Positions 2,797-47,033 of a stretch of 64,000 bases of DNA are shown here, in pieces. Under the pieces are notes generated by a model, which did no database searches, was not told the DNA's origin, and saw only the letters and a list, made by a program, of their open reading frames with translations. This DNA comes from Phallusia mammillata (Eukaryota). The stretch covers positions 19,158,001-19,222,000 of the forward strand of contig OZ281497.1 of assembly GCA_965637545.1 (NCBI GenBank), given 5' to 3'. Every line of letters begins with the position of its first letter. The stretch's first letter is position 1. The translations under genes were made by a program, and so were the position numbers.

Positions 2797-3196
2797 CAGT
2801 GGTTCTCAAACTGGGGTACGCGTACCACTAGTCGGTGGAATTGTCCGGTGGTACGCGAGTAGGATTCTGCTACACCCGGTGGTGAGGTTCAATTTTTTTT
2901 GTCAGCCGGTTCTATCACAAAAGTCATATTTTTCAGCCGGTTCTGCTGTAAAAAGTCCATTTACAGTAACCAGTAATGCTAACCGGTTCGCTGATCTCAT
3001 AAAATTTCGTGAGACGATTCTATAGGACCGGCCGAATCCCACCACTGGCTACACCTAATTTAAGTCCGATTTAAAATTGCATCTCAACTGACCCAATCAT
3101 CCCCGCTTTGGGCGAAACTCGTGTTTTGGACCTTCTTTTGAAATCGCTAAATGAGCTAGCCAGGTTGAGAAAGTAGGCCTATTTCTTGGTCTATTT
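2797..3196. mobile_element. hAT (Buster/Charlie-type) MITE, right end lost, interrupted by a second MITE
   Basis: Starts CAGTGGTTCTCAAACT. Body aligns by eye with the complete copy at 32388-32653 (shared cctaatttaagtc...aaaattgca.ctcaa.tgacccaa...gctagccaggttgagaaag...tttcttggtctat). Confidence 0.8.
2877..3047. mobile_element. Nested hAT MITE, 171 bp
   Basis: TIRs CGGTGGTGAGGTTC / GAATCCCACCACTG (11/14); perfect TSD GCTACACC (2869-2876, 3048-3055); absent at the equivalent site of the 32388 copy. Confidence 0.85.
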
Positions 3197-29600: not shown

Positions 29601-30792
29601 GATGAGAAAGCATTGAATTGAATTACAATAGGTGAATCACGTAATAGTTTTACGAAGCAGAGCCCTAAAGAGGAAAAATATGTGTTGACGCGAGACGTCT
29701 GCTCTTTGCTAAAGTAGGCCAAGACAAATACATACGTGTGCCCACATTTGTTTAAAACCTAAAGAACAAAAAATGTTCGGCAAATAGCAGCAATATTTAT
29801 AATTGCAAATCAACAATATAAGCATGCAAAAATGTGCCTATTTTATTTGCGAACTTCGATATTCATGGACACTTGTGGATCCTCGGCAAACAAACAGTCT
29901 GTAGCCTATGTCTCTCTCATGGGCCTGATATGGAGAACATTTGAGTCACGTTAATGGCCAGAACTATATATAGACGAAAACTCACAAAGTGTTGGGTGGT
30001 TTATTTTGATATTTCCAGATTTAATTTCGAGATACGTTAATTGTCGCACAATTTTTGAAATAAAATTTTCTGTTATCAAACAACATGTTTAGGCGCTTCT
30101 ATTTATTTTATCTTGATCCCCGTGGATTTATTTTGCTTAAAGGACCTTGTCTCAGTATCCCAACATTTTTAATCTGCGATGCTGTTAGGAAAAACCAGAA
30201 CACATTGAAGCAAAACTTTTCTCCTACAATACATGTTCTCCATGTCTTTCTTTTTTAAACCCCCTTTTGTTTTGCTAGAAAACTGACCTGTTAAGAGTGA
30301 CAAGGCGGTTTGCGAAAATACTTCAGTTTCATTGGTGGAAAGGAAATGCGCACTGAACTGTGGGTAGTTGTTTACCACGTGAGGATTGTCGCAGTTAAAT
30401 TGCCGAAGAAGGTGGTGTGGCCAAATTCAGACTTCTGCAGTAAGTTGTTTGCTTGTTGTATTTCTTTGTGCAAAGTATTTTTGTTGTAAATAAGTACAAA
30501 GATTTGATACATGCACACAACTAAACACTGTTTTGCTGCTTTGTGTGGCCGTGTCACAAAAGAGGTTTTATTTTACTGGGTTAAAAATTTCCATGCGAGC
30601 CATGCACCAGTCATTGCCTGTAAGGTTTTTGCGTGATGACTGGGATTTAAGCCTAATAGATCCCATGCGGAGTAACAGTTTAATGGCGCTTTATGAAATG
30701 TAGATATTTTTCAGCTTTGCTTATTTACATTTAAACAGATTTTTAACTTTCGTGCACAGGGTAAGGGTTGGGAGCCGGACCAGCACGGCAAA

Positions 30793-33700
30793 ATGTCGTT
30801 TGATTTCTTTAACTCCCCTAAGTGGGACCCGGTTGCCCGTGATTTGGGGGAAGATTTTAGACTAACTAGCTTTACAGCTCTAAAAGGATGAGGGTGTAAG
30901 GTTCCGCAGGAGGTGCTGCTCAAACTTCTGGCGGAACTAACACCTGATGAAGATGGACAATCAGTTACTGCAAACAATATTACAAAACCTTTAATTGGTG
31001 AGCTGTTTGTGTATAGGGTGGGGTCTTCCCAAATTGTTGCCTGTTCTAAAGTATGTATTTTTATTCCATGCCCATTTCCCATAAAACCTCTTTTGTGAGA
31101 CCGATTCTGATTGTGACAAATTAATTTCAAAATACTTAAATTTTGAAGGATTTATCTGGGCTGATGGCTCTAAGACCCAGATTTGATCCTGAGGCCCATG
31201 GGTTAGATACTAAGTTCCGTCTGACCAAGTACACTGGTAAGAAATGTGCACCTCAGGTCAACTTTGTTTTCAAAATGAAAGATTTACCATGAATGCACTT
31301 TGAAACAAACATTTAGGGCTCCATGGCGGTGCATGTAAAGTTCCCAATGATGTTTTAAATAAACTACTTGAGGAGCTGGTAGATGGATCCAGCCAGTACA
31401 ATGGAGAGCAGTTTCTGGCAGCAATGGTTCAATCTAACATGGGTATATTTTATCACTTGATTCTGTGGTGGTATTTGTGGGAATGGGCATGGCTTTTTTT
31501 AGTCTAGTGTATTTTCCTATTTAATCTTCTGTACTTACTAAATTGCTGAAATGATTTTTTATTTGACTAGGTATTGGACTGGACACATGCATTATTCCTC
31601 TCAGATTTGGGAGTTTGTTTTTGCTGCAAACCACAGATTTCTTTTATCCACTCGTTGATGATCCTTATATGATGGTAAACTTTTTTGAAAAATATGATTT
31701 GTTGATTTGGCAATAGTGTTTGGTGTTTCACAGGGGAGAATCGCCTGTGCAAATGTTTTAAGTGATCTTTATGCAATGGGTGCAACAGAATGTGATACCA
31801 TGATGATGTTACTGGGTGTCAGCTCGAAATTTACTGAAAAGGAGCGAGACATTGTTGTGCCACTCATGATGAGAGGTTTTAAGGTGTTTATACTTAATTG
31901 TTTAAAGGAACTACATCAAAACAATAACCTGCATCATATACTATGTAGGATTGTGCTGAGGAAGGTGGAACAAGTATTACTGGTGGACAAACTGTGCTGA
32001 ATCCATGGTGCTTGATTGGGGGCGTAGCCACATCAGTGTGTCAACAAAATGAGTTTATAATGTAAGATAAATATTGACAACCTGGTTTGCAATTCAACAT
32101 TGACATATGCCCTCGTTCCCAGGCCAAGCAATGCTGTGCCTGGAGATGTATTGGTGTTGACAAAACCGCTGGGAACACAAGTTGCGTGTAATGCCCACCA
32201 ATGGATGGAACAAAAAAATGACAAATGGAACAAAATTAAGTTTATTGTCAGTGAAGAAGATGTGGAAAAGGCTTACCAAGATGCCATGTTTAACATGTCA
32301 AGATTGAATCGATCAGGTATGAAAGTTATTTTCTTATTTCATGTTAAAATGGGTGATTTGATTTTTGCTTGTAATCTTGTTGTAATGCAGTGGTTCTCAA
32401 ACTGTGGTGTGCTGGAACGTTTTAGGTGGTATGCGAGTAGTTTTCTGCTATATATACCTAATTTAAGTCAGATCTAAAATTGCAACTCAATTGACCCAAC
32501 TGATCAGCCCTGGTTTGGGTGAAACTCTTGTTTTGAATATTCTTTGAAATTGCTAAATATGCTAGCCAGGTTGAGAAAGGAGGGCTATTTCTTGGTCTAT
32601 CCATTCAAACAGGGTTTAGTGGTATGCGATTCATATAAGTTTGAGAACCACTGTTATAATGCCATGGCGAAAGTAACAAAGACAATATATGAAAGCTATT
32701 TGAGATTATTCTTAAATTGTATTACAGCTGCACAATTGATGCACACATTTAACAGTCATGGAGCAACTGATGTCACTGGATTTGGAATTATTGGACATGC
32801 CAAAAATTTGGCAAAACAGCAAAAAAATGAAGTAAATTTTGTGATACACAATTTGCCATGTATCAACAAGATGGCATCCATTGCAAAAGCTTGTGGGAAC
32901 ATGTTTGGATTATTGCAAGGAACATCTGCAGAAACTTCAGGTTTGTTTATTGCAATTTCATACTTTTACCCATAAAAAACATTTTTTTAACAGGTGGACT
33001 TTTGATTTGTCTTCCTCGTGAACAAGCTGCAAAATACTGTGCTGAAATTAAAAAGATTGAAGGACATCAAGCTTGGATTATTGGAATAGTTGAAAGTGGT
33101 ACGTGTTAAGGATGTTTTTAAACTGTGTAGCTTAGTTAGTAGAGCATGAGTCATGTTAAGGCTCCTGTTGTGGGTACAAATCCCTCTGCAGGTTAGAAAT
33201 TTTTTTAGCCATGTCTTGCTATATGAAAATGTTTGGTAGGACTCGTTTCAGTCTAACATCTTTAATAATCCCGGCAGACTATAGTTTACTTTCCTTTTTT
33301 AACAAACAGGCACTAGAACAGCTAAAATCATAGAAAAACCCCGTGTAATTGAAGTTCAAACCCTTGAGGATGGGACAGTGCAAAGTGTGCCACCAATTAC
33401 CACTCCAAGAAGAACAGTGGTAAAAAAAATTTTCTGTAAATGATTTTGCTGTGTTGTAACTAAACTTCTTTATTGTCAGGCAAAACATCCAGCATTGGAA
33501 CATTCCAAACCACTGCCAATAAGTGAAGTTTCACAGGTATGTGTAGATTGCTTTAAAACATTAATTGTTGGCAATTTGTTTACAATGGATTCATGATTTA
33601 CTTTCAGCTTAATACACAAGCAACTATACTACCTGTAACAGAACAACAGCAATTGCAAACAGTTGAAACGGTTAGCGCTGATGTTATGCACACACAAACC

Positions 33701-34141
33701 CTTACGCATCTAACACCTGTAACAACTCTTCAGGATGGGCAACAACTCCATCAGGTAACAATGTTGCTCTGTAGAAACTTGCATTGGTGCAAACCTGGCA
33801 GAAGGTTTAGAGCAGTGGTTCTTAGCCTTTTTGCCTTTGCAGATCCTTTTCGATGTTGTAATCTAATTGCGGACCCCTATGAAGTTTTAGGAAGAATGTT
33901 TTTAAACAAGTTGAAGCATTTTTTTTAAATTGTCATTTATCAATCTCGTTGTGTGTGAATTAAGAAGTTGTTGGTGGAGAAACCACTGTTTTAGAGAGAA
34001 TATATTTCCTGTTTTTGTTACAAAAACCATGTGCTATGTGCAAAAACGTTTTCTTCACAGGTTATGGTCCAAGACACACAACAATACCAGCAGCAGATGC
34101 AGCAGCAAGCACAGTTTCAGAACCACCATCACCAGCAGTAG
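30793..34141 (+). CDS. SEPHS2: Selenophosphate synthetase, Sec-containing isoform (SPS2-type selenoprotein), 492 aa
   Basis: Exons 30793-30997, 31571-31674, 31734-31883, 31949-32061, 32123-32316, 32728-32940, 32994-33098, 33310-33419, 33480-33536, 33608-33754, 34061-34141. In-frame TGA at 30889-30891 in [20 protein letters not shown]; motifs [66 protein letters not shown]; SECIS downstream. Confidence 0.95.
30901..30937 (+). promoter_or_regulatory. Candidate Sec redefinition element (stem-loop 9 nt after the Sec UGA)
   Basis: GTTCCG pairs with CGGAAC and CAGGAG with CTTCTG (one bulge, one G-U). The UGA is followed directly by GGGTGT. Confidence 0.6.
31164..31442 (+). CDS. Alternative first coding exons of the SPS gene giving an SPS1-type Gly isoform (490 aa with the shared exons)
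   Basis: Exons 31164-31236 and 31317-31442 encode [25 protein letters not shown]|[20 protein letters not shown]..., paralogous to the Sec exon with GGT (31328-31330) at the Sec position. Ends in phase 1 like the Sec exon, so it can splice to 31571. Confidence 0.92.
32388..32653. mobile_element. Complete hAT (Buster-type) MITE, 266 bp, in an SPS intron
   Basis: Perfect 16-bp TIRs CAGTGGTTCTCAAACT / AGTTTGAGAACCACTG; TSD TTGTAATG / TTATAATG (7/8). Confidence 0.9.
33813..33988. mobile_element. hAT MITE, 176 bp, in the last SPS intron
   Basis: Ends CAGTGGTT... / ...AACCACTG; TSD GTTTAGAG / TTTTAGAG (7/8). Confidence 0.75.
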
Positions 34142-34310
34142 CAAAATTAACTGTATTTGTGTCGCAATTACTGCCTTCGGCAACAGTGCCGCATATCGTG
34201 GGATTTTTTTGTGCGTTTTATAGATCGTGTTCGCATTATCGTTGCGCAGATATGCGTCTTTGCAAAGAGCAGCTTGCAAATTCGTGCATACACGCGCACA
34301 GTCTGGCATT

Positions 34311-34388
34311 GCACTGTAACTCTATGAAGTCTAATCTGAAAATGTGTCCCATCGCAGTGGATTGTGACTGATTTTTTTCGTTATGTGC
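34311..34388 (+). promoter_or_regulatory. SECIS element (probably type II) in the SPS 3' UTR
   Basis: Helix I GCAC..TAAC / GTTA.GTGC; core ATGA (34324-34327) opposite GA (34370-34371); helix II AGTC.AATC / GATT..GACT; apical AAAA (34339-34342) and mini-stem TGTG / CGCA. Confidence 0.9.
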
Positions 34389-34413
34389 TATGTTTGACTA
34401 TTTTAATTGCTGT

Positions 34414-34419
34414 AATAAA
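34414..34419 (+). terminator. Polyadenylation signal of the SPS gene
   Basis: AATAAA 25 nt after the SECIS. Confidence 0.6.
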
Positions 34420-35235
34420 GAGTATTGAAGGGAAATGATTTGTTCCGCCTGATGGTGCACTGGAGCTGATTGAACACTCCCATCAACAGCCCAGCTTTAA
34501 CATAGTCATTTAGTTGCCCTACTTGTTTGTAACATAAGCAATCTCTTTCAAACTTCTAAAAATAATGACGACAAGACCTGCATAAAATCTGAAAAATTTA
34601 TTGTGCTTTATTTAGTTTTCATATATTCTCCACACACTACTAGTCCATAATTTCGAAAGGGCTTCAGGGCAACCGAATAGATTACACAAAAGTTTTTTTT
34701 TGCCGTCACAATCAAATCAAACGCTCGGTTACGGCAGAACAAAGAGAAACAGAGGCGGGGCGTAAATAAATTAGATCAAGCACGTATACAATTGTCACCA
34801 CGGAAATTACATCTATAAGTTTATGAAAGCAGGTTAGATAAATAATAAACAATGTAATTATTATTTAAAAATGTTTTTAATTAAGAAACGAGTAATATAA
34901 ATCAAGTAATTTTGGCGTTGAAAAGCATGTTCAATAAATTGTTAATAATTCCATATTTCAAGGATTAACTTGCCTACAAAACAACCTTGGCCCTGAATTA
35001 TTTTTAACAGATCTTTCTGAAACAGTATCTTTAAACCCGCCACTGCAGACTTTACAAAAGAAGCTTTGTATTCCAGGCTCGGCAAAGCAGTTCGAAATGC
35101 TTCTCCACGCACAGTTACTTAACTAAACTTTTCCGAACAACGACTATTCAAAGAATGAAAGAACGCCCGACGTTTAGTCTCGGTGCAGCCGCTTGCCCCT
35201 GAAAAAGCCTTGGTGTACCACACTCTCTTTCATTG

Positions 35236-42000: not shown

Positions 42001-45000
42001 AAATTATTGAGGACAGCAAGGTACTGCAGTGGGTGTGAATTGGCCACTGTGGCTTGCTATAGTTGCAAAAGAAGCTTTGTATGGGAGAATATTTTAACTT
42101 GTTTAAGCATTTTGAAGTTGTTGTGGTCATTAATCTTGTGGTGCATGCTGTCTCTATGCTGCATGGAATTAAACCATTTTGACATGTTTTTTTCATGCTG
42201 GCACAAACACTTTTAAAATGGTAGTCAGGTTATATTTATTTAAATTGATGTTTTTAGTCCCCAACTCAAATCCTTTCAAGCTGGTCAGAGGACAATGATG
42301 TGTCAGCGAAATTAACACACAATGACAGTGCTATGACTCCTGAAGAAGCACAATCTGCCCCAACTAAAAAGAAGGTAATTATGTGTGACATGTTTAATTG
42401 TTGCAACAAATAGCTATAAATATAAAAATGTTTTTAGCAGAAACATAAATGTTTTTCAGATTATTTGTACAAAGTAACAAACAGTGGCTATATCTTGTTC
42501 TCTTACATGTTAATGTCATTTTTTAGGTTTCCCTGCAAGAATATCTTAAGCGAAGCAAAGATGTGAGAAAAAACAGTGCAGGGTCAGTGGAAATTGCTGA
42601 TCCTCCGAAAGCAACTACCTCAAGTTTTGTAAAAGAAAATGTTTCTGAAACTAATACATTGCCAAGTAATGGAATACCTACCATCATCACAAGTCAGGCT
42701 AATTCCCCCTCAACTGAATCACCTACAATCACTACAGGGCAAAATTCAGAGTAGGTTATAACTGATTTGCTATCGCATTGTTTATTTTCACCAATTGGGC
42801 AACCTTTGTGATCTGATTGTATGAGCTGATGAGTTTTTAGACCAGTAGTTCTCAAAATTGGGGTTTCGGAGTCTCAGTTGCATTAGTTGGGGGGCCTAAG
42901 AAATATTTAAACAGTTAGAATATATGAAGTGGCAAAGAAAATGCCTCCTAACATGGACAAGTTGGTTAAATGTTTCCTAATGTTTGCTGCTTTTACATTG
43001 AAAACAAATGTAGATAAACAATGTTGGCTGTACAATGAATTATTCAGGATTTTCCCAAATGACTCCGCTAATAAGGGGGTACAGTTTGAGAAACACTCAT
43101 ATGTTTTGACTGTTTGCTGTGTTGTTGTCAAACTGTTAGAAATGTATTATAAGATGCTTTCAAAGTCAGTCAAATTCCTGTCTTTCATGCACTGAATTTC
43201 AGGGCCAATGCTTTGATAAATTAGACTAGGTCGTGTTGTGAGCATTTTTGATTTTCACCATTATGTGAATTATCTTTCACAATCTGTCCACAGCATAAAA
43301 TTTAAGATGTCTTTGAAAAATGTAAACATTTATGTAACTTCACTCTATTCCCAGAGTATGCCTAGCAACCTGGGCGGATATTTAAGCTTGTTTAAATAAA
43401 ATATATTTGTACTGTTGACGAGGTGAAGAGGACAACTGCACATATATGTAATGATTTTCACCCGTGATTAACCTTATACTGTCCTTTAAACTTCCAGAAC
43501 AAGCAAAGACAGGAACCTTTTGGTATCGGATGAAACATTAGTGGAGAACCTTTCCAAACTAATCACAGAGGCAGCAAAACCAGCCATTGGCCAATCAAAA
43601 TTAAGTGACCTGTCAAGCGCTTTGTCAACAGGGGCAATCAAAACATTGCCAGCGGAAGTTATGGATATAGTCACCAAAACAGTGAAACAGCTCACGGAAG
43701 GTAAGCATCATAACTTCGTGTTGATGCTCAACTTGCTTGTGCCCTGTTTGTAATACGTTCACTTTGCAATTTTAGATTCAGATGGTCAAAATACACCCAA
43801 GAATGGAAGTGTGAATAGTTCAGATTTGAATGGTAAGTTCATTTGCCCTTCAAGTAGATCTTTCTCAATGATTGTGTTGAAATATTGTTTCGAAAAACAG
43901 GTCCCAGGTTGAAAAATAGCAGCAAAACTTCGCCAGCACTTTCCAACAGTTCACGCAGCACACAGGATAGTTGCAAGAGCCCAAGTGCCAGAAGCAATTC
44001 ATCAGGTACCTCACATCGAGCTCGTTCAGGAAGTAGTGCTGGTGAAACGTCAAAGAAGTCATCATTTTCCAACACTCAATCCCATACCAGCAGCACAGCT
44101 GCAAAACATCTACCTTCGCAGTCGAGTCCAGCAACACCAAACTCTGTACCCTCACCTCGTTCTCCCAGGGTGGCCATTAACTCCTTACGATCCCCCTCTA
44201 CTCCAACTATATATGATCACAGACACAACTCAAGAGGGGAATCCACTAAAGGTTGGTAAAACAGGCATTGTTTTTATTTGTATAAACTGAGAATCTGTCT
44301 ATACCAGCGGTTCCCAAACTGGGGTCCGTACAGCAGTTTCAGAGGGTCCGCAAGGAGAATTAGTCTTTAAACCAAGGGTGTGCAACATTTTTCGCCGGTG
44401 GGCCATAAAACCAATTTCGGACATCAAGCGAGGGCCATACAATTTTATTCATGTGTACGATAAATTTGAAATTCTCTCAAAGCATCGATAAGTTACATGG
44501 TTTCACAACAAAATAATTGTTTACTAGACAAAGGGAATTATTACGTCACCTTCGGTTTAGTACTTGCAAACTGGTTGGAAAACGCTGGTCTAGCTCATAC
44601 TAGTTATGTATAGTATAGTAACTATAGTATAGAGATTTACCAAAAACTAGTGAAAAATTTTGCTGATTGCATTTTTCTCTGAATCAGTGTGTTGGTAAGG
44701 GCCACACTAAATAGTTTGGCGCGCCGCCTGTTGCACACCCCTGCTTCAGTTTCAGAGGGTACGCAATGTTTCTCGGATGTAATGCTTGCTTTATATTAGT
44801 CTTTAGTTAGCGAATGTTTTCAACATTATATCTGTACTGTTATGTTATACTAGAAAAGTTTTTAAACATTAGGCTTTCGCAAAATACCGAAACCGACTGT
44901 ATGTTGTACATGACATGAGAGTCGCGCTATCCTAAACCAAAACCAAACATTAATGAGTTAATTGCAGCAAAACAAGTGCACCCATCTCATTAAACGTCTA

Positions 45001-47033
45001 CCGCATTTGATAGTTTTTTTCTTTCATTGGTGTGGTTTTTGCGTTTTTTCTGGAGCATTCTTTGTTTTTATAGGGCCGCAACATAACAAAATTATTGCAA
45101 AGGGTCCGCCAGGCAAATTTTTTTGAAAAGTTTGGGAACCGCTGGTCTATACAATAGCCTTGTGTCTAATTAGTTTTGTTCATTTAATTTAGTGTTTTAG
45201 CAGTAGTCTCTTTGTGACAAAACTGATTTCAGATACTTGGCTACCACAGGCATGGATCACAAAACAACAGCCTTTTGTGTTCCATGGTTATAAAGGCATG
45301 TGTTTATAGAGGTTCATTGTTAAAATCAAGAACAATATTTGGTTTTGTCATGCCATAATGTTTTCAAAGCCAGTCAAATTCCTGTCTTTCAATCACTGAA
45401 TTTCAGGGCCAATGCTTTGATAAATAATAGATCAGATTGGTTACTTTGTTGTTCTCATTATTGGTGAACTGCTTTATCTATCTGTTCACATTACCATTCT
45501 GACGCTTGTACAAAATTAATATTTGTGTTTATTATTGATTATTTTAGACAATGTGCTGAACAACTCTCGATCCCGACATAACAGTGGGGCATCAAGTGGC
45601 AGTAGCAGTAACCTATCTACTAGGTCACCAAGACCAGGCTCTTCATTGGTAAGTGTTCTTGAGACTGAGGTTCATTATGTCCCTTCATTAGGGTTTTTCC
45701 TGTTAAGTTGACATTACTTTGTGCAGATTATAATTAGTGTAGACCTAAAATTGTAAACTGTTTTGACCAATCAATTTATTCCAAAGATGTGTATGACTTT
45801 TGTGATTGATGGATGCCCTAAGTATGCAAGGGATTTCTGTGTTTGCATTTTATCCACCCACTGTTTGTCCTTAACCCCTGCCACACATTAACCTATATAT
45901 AAACTTGACAGCAACACTAAAATGTTACTCAAAATTCAAAACTCTGTGACGCTAAGACAATTTTTATGAATCTGAATAAAATTTGACTAATTGGCCACTA
46001 GTTCTACCTCAATATATTATCTTTGTTATGGTATATAAAAAGGGTGTTACATATGAATGTTTGATCAGTCCAGTTGATGCAAATGTTGCTGTCAATAATT
46101 GTGCATGTTCTATCTACACATTGCAATTTGGCGTCTAGTTAGCAGGATTAGTCAGTTTAAATAAGTATCATGGTTCCATTGGGATGTGGGAGACAGCAAG
46201 TATGGCATTGTATTGTAGTGGATAATATATGTATCCAATGTGATGATAAAAAAAGAACGTGATAAATAGCATTCATTGGGTCTTATAAAATAACATCATC
46301 TGTAGCTGGAAAACACTATTTTTAGTTAAATTTGCCTGTGTTTCACTACTGTTTAACAATTGCACATTTCTAACATCTATTCAACCATTTCTAGGATTAT
46401 CACTCCAGCAAACATCCAAGTACATCAGGCAGCTACAAACTGGATTCCCACCCACGTGTGCCTGCAAACCAACCCCAAAAGGTTCCCTCTCTGACCCCCG
46501 CCGTCCCTGGCCAACCTATTCCTTCGCTAATGCGCGGTCCTGGTGGAGTCATACCCCAAGTGATATACAACAGTAGGCCAGCTCCTGTTTCGTCGCGGTC
46601 ATCACAGAACAGTCCCCCACCTTGGGATGACTACAGGCCTACAGAGCCTCCAGGAAGGCCACCCAAAGAACCCCACTACAGTCGGCCACCTTATTATCCT
46701 CCAGGGCCACCTCCTGAACCTCCAGGGGGCGGTTACAGGCGAAACAGTTATGATAAACCATACTATGACCGATATTCGCATCCTTACCCGAGGAGAGAAG
46801 AGCCGAGGGAGGATTACCTGCCACCCAAGCACAGCCCTCCGCCTCCCCCTTATTACCACCACAACTCTTATTACCCCGAGGGTAAGGGAGGGTATTTCCC
46901 ACCACGCGAAGCTCGTCCGGTCAGTCCTGGGCCTCATCACCGCCACGGACCGCCGGAGTATTACAACAGCAAGCGAAAGAGCGACTCCTGTTACAGGTCG
47001 AGCTTTTATGCGCCGGATATGCACAGGCGATAG
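36028..47033 (+). CDS. KMT2E: KMT2E (MLL5)/SETD5-family PHD and inactive-SET protein, more than 20 exons
   Basis: ATG 36028; GLPYQ|[14 protein letters not shown] (36168-36498); PHD finger [29 protein letters not shown]...CDRC (37080-37373); SET domain with [27 protein letters not shown] (38641-38937, RRSC in place of NHSC as in this family); [19 protein letters not shown] (39541); RWLQRAIKE; [12 protein letters not shown]; Pro/Tyr-rich last exon 46396-47033. Some low-complexity exon boundaries are approximate. Confidence 0.92.
39881..40250. mobile_element. hAT MITE, 370 bp, in a KMT2E intron
   Basis: Perfect TIRs TAGTGATGGG / CCCATCACTA; perfect TSD CAAACGAC (39873-39880, 40251-40258); clusters of (C)GATACC/GAGTAC subterminal repeats. 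Confidence 0.92.
43160..43295 (+). ncRNA. Candidate intronic H/ACA snoRNA, copy 1
   Basis: Hairpin 1 (TCAAAG/CTTTGA base, AAATTC/GAATTT upper stem), H box AAATTA (43218-43223), hairpin 2 (TTGTGA/TCACAA, TTCAC/GTGAA), ACA at 43290-43292; about 136 nt; first hairpin duplicated at 45364. Confidence 0.6.
44373..44743. mobile_element. Nested hAT MITE, 371 bp
   Basis: TIRs CAAGGGTGTGCAAC / GTTGCACACCCCTG (13/14). Flanked by a duplicated host segment (cagtttcagagggt.cgcaa) rather than a clean 8-bp TSD. Confidence 0.75.
44881..44993 (+). pseudogene. Disrupted C-terminus of a hAT (Buster/Charlie-type) transposase
   Basis: Translates [19 protein letters not shown](frameshift)[16 protein letters not shown], resembling the KYRNRL...DMRVALS...P...LI..KQ..PSH end of these transposases (recognised from memory). 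Confidence 0.7.
45364..45493 (+). ncRNA. Candidate intronic H/ACA snoRNA, copy 2
   Basis: First ~60 nt nearly identical to 43160-43220; H box AAATAA (45422-45427); second hairpin (CAGAT/ATCTG, GTTC/GAAC); ACA at 45488-45490, 55 nt before the next KMT2E acceptor. Confidence 0.6.

What the first reader, a model, noticed from the sequence alone, without database searches (positions are those of the whole stretch)
30793..34419. One selenophosphate synthetase locus encodes both a selenoprotein (Sec) and a Gly-substituted SPS1-like form through alternative first exons
Seen: two paralogous N-termini in tandem, [16 protein letters not shown] (one exon, 30793-30997) and RLTKYTG|LHG-G-ACKVP (two exons, 31164-31442). 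Both end in phase 1 and splice to common exon 31571; the shared 3' UTR has a SECIS and the true stop is UAG. Known: SPS2 (Sec) makes selenophosphate, while SPS1 forms lack Sec and have a distinct, poorly defined role. From memory, an alternative-exon Sec/Gly SPS gene was described in ascidians (Mariotti et al. 2015), so the system itself is probably not new. Inference: this is a snapshot of subfunctionalisation before full gene duplication, and the intron inside the Gly N-terminus may be a lineage-specific gain.
Basis: partly seen in the sequence, partly recalled or inferred. Interest (0 to 1): 0.8.

Follow-up and report, generated by a model that had tools for sequence, protein, structure and literature searches.

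The report
Sea-squirt dual Sec/Gly selenophosphate synthetase gene
This is the sea squirt Phallusia mammillata's copy of a gene type already described in Ciona, where one selenophosphate synthetase gene makes either a selenocysteine enzyme or a glycine-substituted SPS1-like form by swapping its first coding exons; the finding is real and transcribed, but it is an ortholog of a published system.

Summary
The two N-terminal coding modules are a Sec exon (30793-30997) and a Gly pair (31164-31236, 31317-31442). Both end in phase 1 and join the common exon at 31571. The stop is TAG at 34139-34141, and a SECIS candidate lies at 34316-34384.

Assembled RNA contigs from four studies show all three predicted junctions. 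The Gly model is 490/490 identical to the deposited Phallusia mammillata protein A0A6F9DSJ3. This is the ascidian "SPS-ae" gene of Mariotti et al. 2015 in a species that paper did not cover.

- **Not first exons.** A shared non-coding leader exon (about 30385-30439) splices to either module. The Sec exon acceptor (30760) also receives the ascidian spliced leader.
- **Intron not gained recently.** The intron inside the Gly N-terminus sits at the same site and phase in Clavelina, Styela and an unidentified ascidian. It is old within ascidians.

Two runs also contain a Sec-exon-to-Gly-exon junction, which puts a premature stop in the Sec reading frame. Its role is unknown.

The result is of modest interest: a new member of a known kind. 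The scan's earlier notes on this genome had no entry for this gene.

The parts
30385..30439 (+). Shared non-coding leader exon with no ATG. Its 5' ends are seen between about 30341 and 30385, and its donor follows 30439.
   Evidence: joints 30439>30760 (X2) and 30439>31149 (X1, X5); a SMART-oligo loose end at 30383 (X5); no depth upstream of 30322; no ATG in 30385-30439.
30760..30997 (+). Sec (SPS2-type) exon. ATG is at 30793 and the Sec codon TGA at 30889-30891, followed by GGGTGT. The exon ends in phase 1. Its acceptor at 30760 takes either the leader exon or the trans-spliced leader.
   Evidence: joint 30997>31571 in 4 of 4 runs; loose end ATTCTATTTGAATA+AG at 30758 in X5; this sequence is the Ciona spliced leader.
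30892..30945 (+). Stable hairpin starting directly after the UGA (SRE-type Sec recoding element). It begins with the readthrough-associated hexanucleotide GGGTGT.
   Evidence: -28.2 kcal/mol, z -3.56, 0 of 200 shuffles fold as well; the hairpin is kept in 4 ascidian-type Sec exons, with 2 pairs showing changes on both sides; hexanucleotide GGGTG[T/C] defined by Mariotti et al., Supplement S6.
31149..31236 (+). Gly exon 1. ATG is at 31164, there are 73 coding bases, and the exon ends in phase 1.
   Evidence: joints 30439>31149, 30997>31149, 31236>31317; the model is identical to the deposited Phallusia protein.
31237..31316 (+). 80-nt GT..AG intron inside the Gly N-terminus, at the same position and phase in four ascidians.
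   Evidence: joint present in 4 of 4 runs with 87-88 letters on the shorter side; introns of 76, 87 and 180 nt at the same site in L011, Clavelina and Styela.
31317..31442 (+). Gly exon 2. Gly29 (GGT, 31328-31330) aligns with Sec. The exon ends in phase 1.
   Evidence: (joint 31442>31571 in 4 of 4 runs).
31571..34141 (+). Ten common coding exons: 31571-31674, 31734-31883, 31949-32061, 32123-32316, 32728-32940, 32994-33098, 33310-33419, 33480-33536, 33608-33754 and 34061-34141 (stop TAG 34139-34141). They encode the AIRS/AIRS_C core and a Gln-rich C-terminal tail.
   Evidence: model; every junction is present in all 4 runs. (AIRS, AIRS_C; human SEPHS1 at 8e-21); the Ciona cloning primer ends ...QFQNHHQ-stop.
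34316..34384 (+). SECIS element candidate in the shared 3' UTR, with AUGA at 34324, AAAA at 34339 and CUGAU at 34368.
   Evidence: SECIS_1 at 28.1 bits, E 0.0075; the fold shows helix I, an internal loop, helix II and an apical mini-stem; single contigs run from 31570 through 34378-34437.
34414..34419 (+). Poly(A) signal AATAAA. RNA contigs end at 34424-34437.

Best explanation
This is the Phallusia mammillata ortholog of the ascidian SPS-ae gene, a single selenophosphate synthetase locus that produces two proteins.

Shown: transcription starts at about 30341-30385 and yields a short non-coding leader exon. Its donor joins either the Sec exon (30760) or Gly exon 1 (31149), skipping the Sec exon. 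The Sec exon acceptor can also receive the trans-spliced leader. The Sec exon donor joins the common exon at 31571, skipping the Gly exons. Gly exon 2 joins the same acceptor in the same phase.

Inferred from the family: in Sec-form mRNA the UGA at codon 33 is recoded to selenocysteine by the 3'-UTR SECIS, assisted by the hairpin just downstream of the UGA. This gives an SPS2-type enzyme that makes selenophosphate for Sec-tRNA synthesis. Gly-form mRNA starts at its own AUG and carries Gly at that site. By analogy with Ciona SPS-Gly, it serves the separate SPS1-type function, and its SECIS is idle.

Shown but unexplained: transcripts that include both modules have a premature stop in the Sec frame and are probably unproductive.
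For: Gene model and phases.

Family assignment: AIRS and AIRS_C hits on single exons, and human SEPHS1 structures at E 8e-21 for a 50-aa exon.

RNA evidence: in 4 runs from 4 studies all constitutive and alternative joints are present, the leader joins Sec or Gly, the spliced leader sits on the Sec exon, and one contig covers the common exons plus the 3' UTR.

Independent confirmation of the Gly model: 490/490 identity to A0A6F9DSJ3 / CAB3265973.1 of Phallusia mammillata.

Recoding elements: SECIS candidate and UGA-proximal hairpin.

Same tandem layout elsewhere: Sec exon, then Gly exon 1, intron, Gly exon 2 in Clavelina and in metagenome contigs L011-L013.

Selection: against the L011 species both modules are under purifying selection. 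The Sec exon has pN 0.35 and pS 0.66. The Gly exons have pN 0.15 and pS 0.77. Common exons have pN 0.07-0.10.

Published precedent: SPS-ae in Ciona and Molgula, with the Ciona Gly form rescuing the Drosophila SPS1 mutant (PMC4561486). Exon sizes 104/150/113/194/213/105 are the same as in Ciona.
Against: - The SECIS score is below Rfam's gathering threshold, and its fold is not more stable than shuffles (z -0.92).
- Three alternative joints rest on only 28-30 letters on one side: Sec>common, Gly2>common and Sec>Gly1. Logan contigs break at branch points, and this is under the tool's 31-letter rule.
- No protein-level evidence for Sec insertion or for either isoform's activity was obtainable.
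- In runs X2 and X17 the only retained upstream link of the Gly contig is the Sec exon, so in some samples the Sec-skipping Gly mRNA may be the minor form.
- Contig depths cannot quantify isoforms.
Confidence: 0.9

Rival explanations
1. The Gly exons are a decaying tandem duplicate of the N-terminal exon. Their splicing is noise, or only feeds nonsense-mediated decay, and no Gly protein matters.
For: Tandem Sec+Gly transcripts carrying a premature stop exist. The Gly exons lie inside what is otherwise the Sec-to-common intron.
Against: The Gly N-terminus is better conserved than the Sec N-terminus across species whose synonymous sites are saturated (pN 0.15 against 0.35). It has an intact ORF with the same intron in four ascidians, including Styela, where it is the only N-terminus kept. 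Leader>Gly junctions skip the Sec exon. A cDNA-derived protein record exists. The Ciona Gly form is active in a fly rescue assay.
Confidence: 0.03
2. The tandem mRNA (Sec exon plus Gly exons) is a functional product. Termination at UGA33 lets ribosomes reinitiate at the Gly AUG 121 nt downstream. Sec insertion carries them past that AUG to a stop at 31185-31187. The Gly/Sec protein ratio would then respond to selenium supply.
For: The joint 30997>31149 is seen in two independent studies, and there it is the only retained upstream link of the Gly contig. The ORF ahead of the UGA is short (32 codons), and the Sec-frame stop overlaps the start of the Gly ORF.
Against: Two out-of-frame AUGs with a 15-codon ORF lie between the UGA and the Gly AUG. 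The joint is supported by only 28 letters on the Sec side. A leader>Gly mRNA that needs no such mechanism exists in X1 and X5. No translation data are available.
Confidence: 0.06
3. The apparent duplication is an assembly artefact, for example collapsed haplotypes or a mis-joined paralog, and the two forms come from two genes.
For: None found.
Against: The two modules share only 57% nucleotide identity in their best-conserved core. The same order and spacing recur in independent assemblies of Clavelina and the L011-L013 contigs. RNA contigs join both modules to the same downstream exon sequence, which is covered by a single contig per run.
Confidence: 0.01

Closest known systems
SPS-ae of Ciona intestinalis / C. 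savignyi and Molgula tectiformis (Mariotti et al. 2015, Genome Res 25:1256, PMC4561486)
   Same: One SPS gene has a Sec N-terminal exon and a Gly N-terminal alternative. Downstream exons of identical sizes (104/150/113/194/213/105) and the SECIS-bearing 3' UTR are shared. The Gly form starts MALRP(K/R)FDP, the C-terminus is Gln-rich and ends ...QFQNHH..., and GGGTG[T/C] follows the UGA.
   Different: The species differs (Phallusia mammillata, Ascidiidae) and the N-terminal sequences are diverged. Features shown here that the paper text I could read does not state: a shared non-coding leader exon, the spliced leader on the Sec exon, a Sec+Gly tandem transcript, and the position of the intron inside the Gly N-terminus.
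Styelidae/Pyuridae pair: intron-containing SPS1-Gly gene plus intronless retrocopied SPS2-Sec (Botryllus, Halocynthia; Styela clava locus L081 here)
   Same: The Gly N-terminus is split by the same phase-1 intron after 73 coding bases, and the common exon structure is the same.
   Different: In Styela no Sec exon and no TGAGGGTG motif occur within 3 kb upstream, so the two functions are already in separate genes. Phallusia keeps both in one gene.
Vertebrate SEPHS2 (Sec) and SEPHS1 (Thr) paralogs
   Same: The labour is divided the same way between a Sec enzyme and a non-Sec, non-Cys form. The core is 70-80% identical, and PDB SEPHS1 matches at 8e-21 on one exon.
   Different: In vertebrates there are two genes from whole-gene duplication, with Thr rather than Gly at the site. 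Here there is one gene and an exon-level duplication.
Insect SPS1 (Arg, or UGA read through without SECIS)
   Same: A non-Sec SPS form with a function separate from selenophosphate synthesis. Hymenopteran UGA is followed by the GGGTG[T/C] hexanucleotide and a hairpin.
   Different: It is an independent duplication, no alternative exons are involved, and many insects lack selenoproteins altogether.

Membership tests
Selenophosphate synthetase (SelD/SPS; AIR-synthase-related fold) | AIRS N-terminal and AIRS_C C-terminal domains | tested here: met
   single exons hit PF00586 (21.6 bits) and PF02769 (21.7, 23.4 and 15 bits) in collinear profile order. Each exon alone is near or below the whole-protein cut-off; full-length relatives, including the identical Phallusia protein, carry both domains.
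Selenophosphate synthetase (SelD/SPS; AIR-synthase-related fold) | Close sequence similarity to experimentally solved SPS proteins | tested here: met
   the 50-aa exon 31734-31883 matches human SEPHS1 (3fd5, 9hjt) at E 8e-21 over its full length.
Selenophosphate synthetase (SelD/SPS; AIR-synthase-related fold) | N-terminal glycine-rich loop G-(U/C)-G-C-K with the catalytic Sec/Cys | tested here: met
   the Sec exon reads LKG-U-GCKVPQ, aligned with the UGA of many metazoan SPS2 sequences. The Gly form reads LHG-G-ACKVP, so it lacks the Sec/Cys.
Eukaryotic selenoprotein gene | In-frame UGA at a conserved Sec position, with coding conservation continuing downstream | tested here: met
   UGA aligns with UGA in Clavelina, L011, L001 and other metazoan loci, and the exon downstream of it is under purifying selection.
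Eukaryotic selenoprotein gene | [quoted passage not shown] | tested here: inconclusive
   SECIS_1 at 28.1 bits, below the gathering score of 35, E 0.0075 in 2 kb. The canonical AUGA / AAA / UGAU motifs and SECIS-like fold are present, inside the transcribed 3' UTR. SECISearch3 was not available.
Eukaryotic selenoprotein gene | Actual insertion of selenocysteine | not testable with these tools
   Needs 75Se labelling or mass spectrometry.
Ascidian SPS-ae (dual Sec/Gly gene) | A single locus with a Sec N-terminal exon and a Gly N-terminal alternative joining the same downstream exon in the same phase | tested here: met
Ascidian SPS-ae (dual Sec/Gly gene) | Both isoforms transcribed, differing only at the 5' end and sharing the 3' UTR with the SECIS | tested here: met
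   isoform-specific contigs are present in four studies, and one contig per run covers 31570 to 34378-34437.
Ascidian SPS-ae (dual Sec/Gly gene) | Orthology to the Ciona gene | tested here: met
   the Ciona Gly isoform (P0126) begins MALRPKFDP...[20 protein letters not shown]. Common exon sizes are identical. The same C-terminal tail is encoded by the paper's cloning primer. The Ciona genomic locus itself could not be fetched.
SPS1-type function of the Gly isoform | No selenophosphate synthesis, and a separate activity able to replace Drosophila SPS1 | not tested
   Shown only for the Ciona Gly form by Mariotti et al., and inferred here by orthology.

The most novel reading that the evidence does not exclude
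The transcript containing the Sec exon followed by the Gly exons is not splicing noise but a selenium-responsive switch. Ribosomes that terminate at UGA33 can reinitiate at the Gly AUG and make the SPS1-like form. Ribosomes that insert Sec run past that AUG to a nearby stop. One mRNA would then report selenium status. Linked to this, the GGGTG[T/C] hexanucleotide and hairpin, kept after the UGA in Phallusia, Clavelina and the L011 species, would be functional rather than the relic proposed for Ciona.
Probability: 0.07. Interest if true: 0.55.

Novelty: new member of a known kind. Interest (0 to 1): 0.3.

Why it matters
The locus is a clear, transcribed example of two protein functions (SPS2 and SPS1) separated at the level of alternative exons before gene duplication, which is the evolutionary intermediate proposed by Mariotti et al.

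Finding it in Phallusia and Clavelina, with the same exon order and the same Gly-exon intron as in Styela, supports an origin at or near the base of ascidians. It also dates the intron to that origin.

It gives Phallusia, a species used for embryology, a defined pair of isoforms and splice junctions that can be targeted separately to ask what the SPS1-type function is. None of this changes the published picture. It extends that picture and adds transcript-level detail.

Tried and rejected
- **Rfam at gathering thresholds** found no SECIS in the window. It appeared only in a 2-kb E-value search.
- **Pfam on the two N-terminal exon pieces** found nothing.
The 70-aa common exon was used instead.
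- **Exact-protein look-ups failed** for the Clavelina representative, the Styela representative and the Ciona intestinalis Gly isoform. Other cluster members worked for Clavelina and Styela. The Ciona genomic layout of the Gly exons could therefore not be checked.
- **No SECIS_1 match** was found in the Clavelina 3' region or in the whole L080/L081 loci. The L011-L013 contigs end before the 3' UTR. SECIS conservation across species therefore remains unshown.
- **ARAGORN did not confirm** the intronic tRNA-like hit.
- **Steric or U12-type explanations for exon exclusivity were considered and dropped.** The Sec-to-Gly intron is 151 nt, and all donors look U2-type in the sequence.
- **Isoform ratios were not estimated**, because contig depths are not a valid measure.
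- **The large representative-protein search was not used**, because the protein's identity was never in doubt.
Full report
**What is in the sequence**

On the + strand an ATG at 30793 opens an exon ending at 30997. It encodes a typical SPS N-terminus with TGA (30889-30891) in the catalytic loop, LKG-U-GCKVPQ.

A second ATG lies 167 bases further on, at 31164. It opens a 73-base coding piece ending at 31236. After an 80-base GT..AG intron comes a 126-base piece (31317-31442). Together these two pieces encode a paralogous N-terminus in which Gly29 (GGT, 31328-31330) aligns with the Sec residue: LHG-G-ACKVP.

Both modules end with one base of a split codon, and both complete GGT with 31571-31572. 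Ten further exons with canonical splice sites carry the frame to TAG at 34139-34141. The Sec form is 492 aa and the Gly form 490 aa.

The two N-termini share 26 identical residues. Their alignment score lies 11.6 standard deviations above shuffles, and none of 2000 shuffles reached it. Nucleotide identity in the best-conserved core is only 57%, so the duplication is old and not an assembly artefact.

**Family**

Single exons hit the AIRS and AIRS_C domains in collinear order. One 50-residue exon matches the solved human SEPHS1 structures at E 8e-21.

A word-based protein search seeded with a related intronless contig returned thousands of SPS proteins. Among them was UniProt A0A6F9DSJ3 / CAB3265973.1, 'selenophosphate synthetase 2 [Phallusia mammillata]'. 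It is identical over all 490 residues to my Gly-isoform model.

It independently confirms the Gly exon joins. It also shows that the Gly form is already deposited.

**Recoding signals**

Rfam's SECIS_1 model matches 34316-34384 at 28.1 bits. This is below the gathering score of 35, with E 0.0075 in a 2-kb search. The match has AUGA at 34324, an unpaired AAAA at 34339 and CUGAU at 34368. The predicted fold has the expected two helices, internal loop and apical mini-stem.

The element lies 175 bases after the stop and 30 bases before the AATAAA at 34414-34419.

Directly after the UGA comes GGGTGT. This is the hexanucleotide GGGTG[T/C] that Mariotti et al. associate with UGA readthrough. It begins a hairpin of -28.2 kcal/mol (z -3.56, 0 of 200 shuffles as stable).

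The hairpin is kept in the Sec exons of Clavelina, the L011 contig and L001, with two pairs changed on both sides. With four sequences and coding constraint, that is supportive but not proof.

**Transcripts**

Twenty public runs of one organism hold the stretch. Fourteen hold about 0.43-0.49 of its words, roughly the exonic share.

Contigs of four runs from four studies were laid on 30000-34800. All nine constitutive junctions are present in all four runs, including the four that build the Gln-rich C-terminal tail.

- 30997>31571
- 31236>31317
- 31442>31571

One contig per run covers the common exons and the 3' UTR to 34378-34437. Both forms therefore share the SECIS region.

1. **A shared leader exon.** An upstream exon ending at 30439 joins 30760 (the Sec exon, run X2) or 31149 (Gly exon 1, runs X1 and X5, with 57-87 letters on the shorter side). 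The two modules are therefore alternative first coding exons behind a shared non-coding leader. The leader has no ATG. A SMART template-switch oligo (recognised from my own knowledge) abuts 30383 in X5 and marks a cDNA 5' end. X1 extends to about 30341.
2. **A trans-spliced leader.** In X5 a contig carries the template-switch oligo followed by ATTCTATTTGAATA and the AG at 30758-30759, then the Sec exon, then 30 bases of the common exon. That sequence is the 16-nt Ciona spliced leader. Some Sec-form mRNA is therefore trans-spliced at the 30760 acceptor.
3. **A tandem form.** In X2 and X17 the Gly-exon contig is preceded by the last 28 bases of the Sec exon (joint 30997>31149). In that form the Sec frame runs into a stop at 31185-31187 after 13 further codons.

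There is a caveat. Logan contigs break at branch points, so the Sec>common, Gly2>common and Sec>Gly1 joints have only 28-30 letters on one side. That is below the tool's own 31-letter rule. Contig depth cannot be used to rank the isoforms either.

**Comparison with other ascidians**

A scan of metagenome contigs with a common exon found three near-identical 7-kb contigs, L011-L013, at 89% identity on that exon. They show the same layout:

- Sec exon with TGA followed by GGGTGT
- Gly exon 1 of 73 coding bases
- a 76-base intron
- Gly exon 2 of 120 bases
- the common exons

The genomic loci of Clavelina lepadiformis (Aplousobranchia) and Styela clava (Stolidobranchia) were fetched through cluster members.

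| Species / locus | Sec exon | Gly exon 1 (coding) | Gly intron | Gly exon 2 |
|---|---|---|---|---|
| Phallusia (window) | 30793-30997, TGA + GGGTGT | 73 nt | 80 nt | 126 nt |
| L011 (unidentified ascidian) | 1823-2030, TGA + GGGTGT | 73 nt | 76 nt | 120 nt |
| Clavelina (L080) | 2821-3013, TGA + GGGTGC | 73 nt | 87 nt | 123 nt |
| Styela (L081) | none within 3 kb upstream, no TGAGGGTG | 73 nt | 180 nt | 120 nt |

The Styela pattern is what the published model predicts for Styelidae.

The intron in the Gly N-terminus is thus at one position and phase in four ascidians spanning the three traditional orders. The N-terminal coding exon is uninterrupted in amphioxus, lamprey, human SEPHS1 and the Ciona Sec exon (exon lists in the paper's alignment file). 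The intron is therefore specific to the ascidian Gly module and about as old as that module. It is not a recent gain in this lineage.

**Selection**

Between Phallusia and the L011 species synonymous sites are saturated (pS 0.66-0.88). Non-synonymous divergence is as follows:

| Region | pN |
|---|---|
| Sec exon | 0.35 |
| Gly exons | 0.15 |
| Common exons | 0.07-0.10 |

Both modules are constrained, the Gly one more strongly. This matches the published observation that SPS2 evolves faster than SPS1 after separation.

The Gly module also keeps the ancestral-looking ends: MA.R..FDP.AH.LD at the start and EQF near the end. These ends are seen in other metazoan SPS2 N-termini. The Sec module keeps the ancestral catalytic loop.

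**What it is and how it works**

The locus is the Phallusia ortholog of the SPS-ae gene described in Ciona intestinalis, C. savignyi and Molgula tectiformis (PMC4561486). Exon sizes of 104/150/113/194/213/105 are the same as in Ciona. The paper's Ciona cloning primers encode MALRPKFDPQS and ...QMQQFQNHHQ-stop, matching this gene's Gly start and C-terminus.

What is shown:
- the exon anatomy
- the alternative junctions
- the shared leader and 3' UTR
- the conservation across ascidians

What is inferred from the family:
- that UGA33 is read as Sec through the SECIS
- that the Sec form makes selenophosphate
- that the Gly form carries the SPS1-type function, as the Ciona Gly form does when it rescues the Drosophila SPS1 mutant

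The role of the tandem Sec+Gly transcript is open. The simplest reading is unproductive splicing removed by nonsense-mediated decay. A reinitiation switch responsive to selenium is possible but untested.

**Verdict**

Two details are corrected: these are not first exons, and the intron is not lineage-specific.

The system is published. This is a new species instance with added transcript detail and wider comparative support.

Noticed in passing
window 33121-33194 (+), intron between 33098 and 33310: A tRNA-like sequence scores 31.1 bits against Rfam tRNA, just above gathering. ARAGORN calls no tRNA there. It is probably a tRNA-derived repeat or pseudogene.
   Followed up: partly
window 32388-32653, intron between 32316 and 32728; related arm at 33807-33829: A roughly 266-bp element is bounded by perfect 16-nt terminal inverted repeats, CAGTGGTTCTCAAACT / AGTTTGAGAACCACTG, so it is MITE-like. 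Run X1 shows extra contig depth and a loose end at 32619 there, as expected for a dispersed repeat.
   Followed up: partly
L080 (Clavelina) 2911-2919; L011 1919-1927; window 30889-30897: TGA followed by GGGTG[T/C] is present in Phallusia, Clavelina and the L011 species and absent from the Styela locus. The 2015 supplement states that among ascidians it was found only in Ciona and regarded it as a likely relic. It seems to track retention of the dual gene.
   Followed up: partly
L080 10937-11140 and window about 43160-45493: In Clavelina the next gene downstream of SPS encodes a PHD/SET protein. Synteny is probably conserved.
   Followed up: no
L046, L016, L056, L057, L010 (metagenome contigs): Other residues occupy the Sec site in environmental SPS sequences. 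LKG-L-GCK is the annelid SPS1-Leu type and LRG-R-ASK the insect SPS1-Arg type. IKGK-CKVPQ shows an apparent one-residue deletion.
   Followed up: no
L001 (1695-nt metagenome contig): An intronless or spliced Sec-form SPS sequence has a long Gln-rich tail and is 83% identical to the Phallusia common part. It is either a transcript or a retrocopied SPS2 of another ascidian. No SECIS was detected within the contig.
   Followed up: partly
window 34222: There is an A>G difference in the 3' UTR in run X1 only, probably a polymorphism.
   Followed up: no
window 33727-34087: Low-depth contigs in X1, X2 and X17 run through the last intron. This is unspliced precursor or minor intron retention.
   Followed up: no
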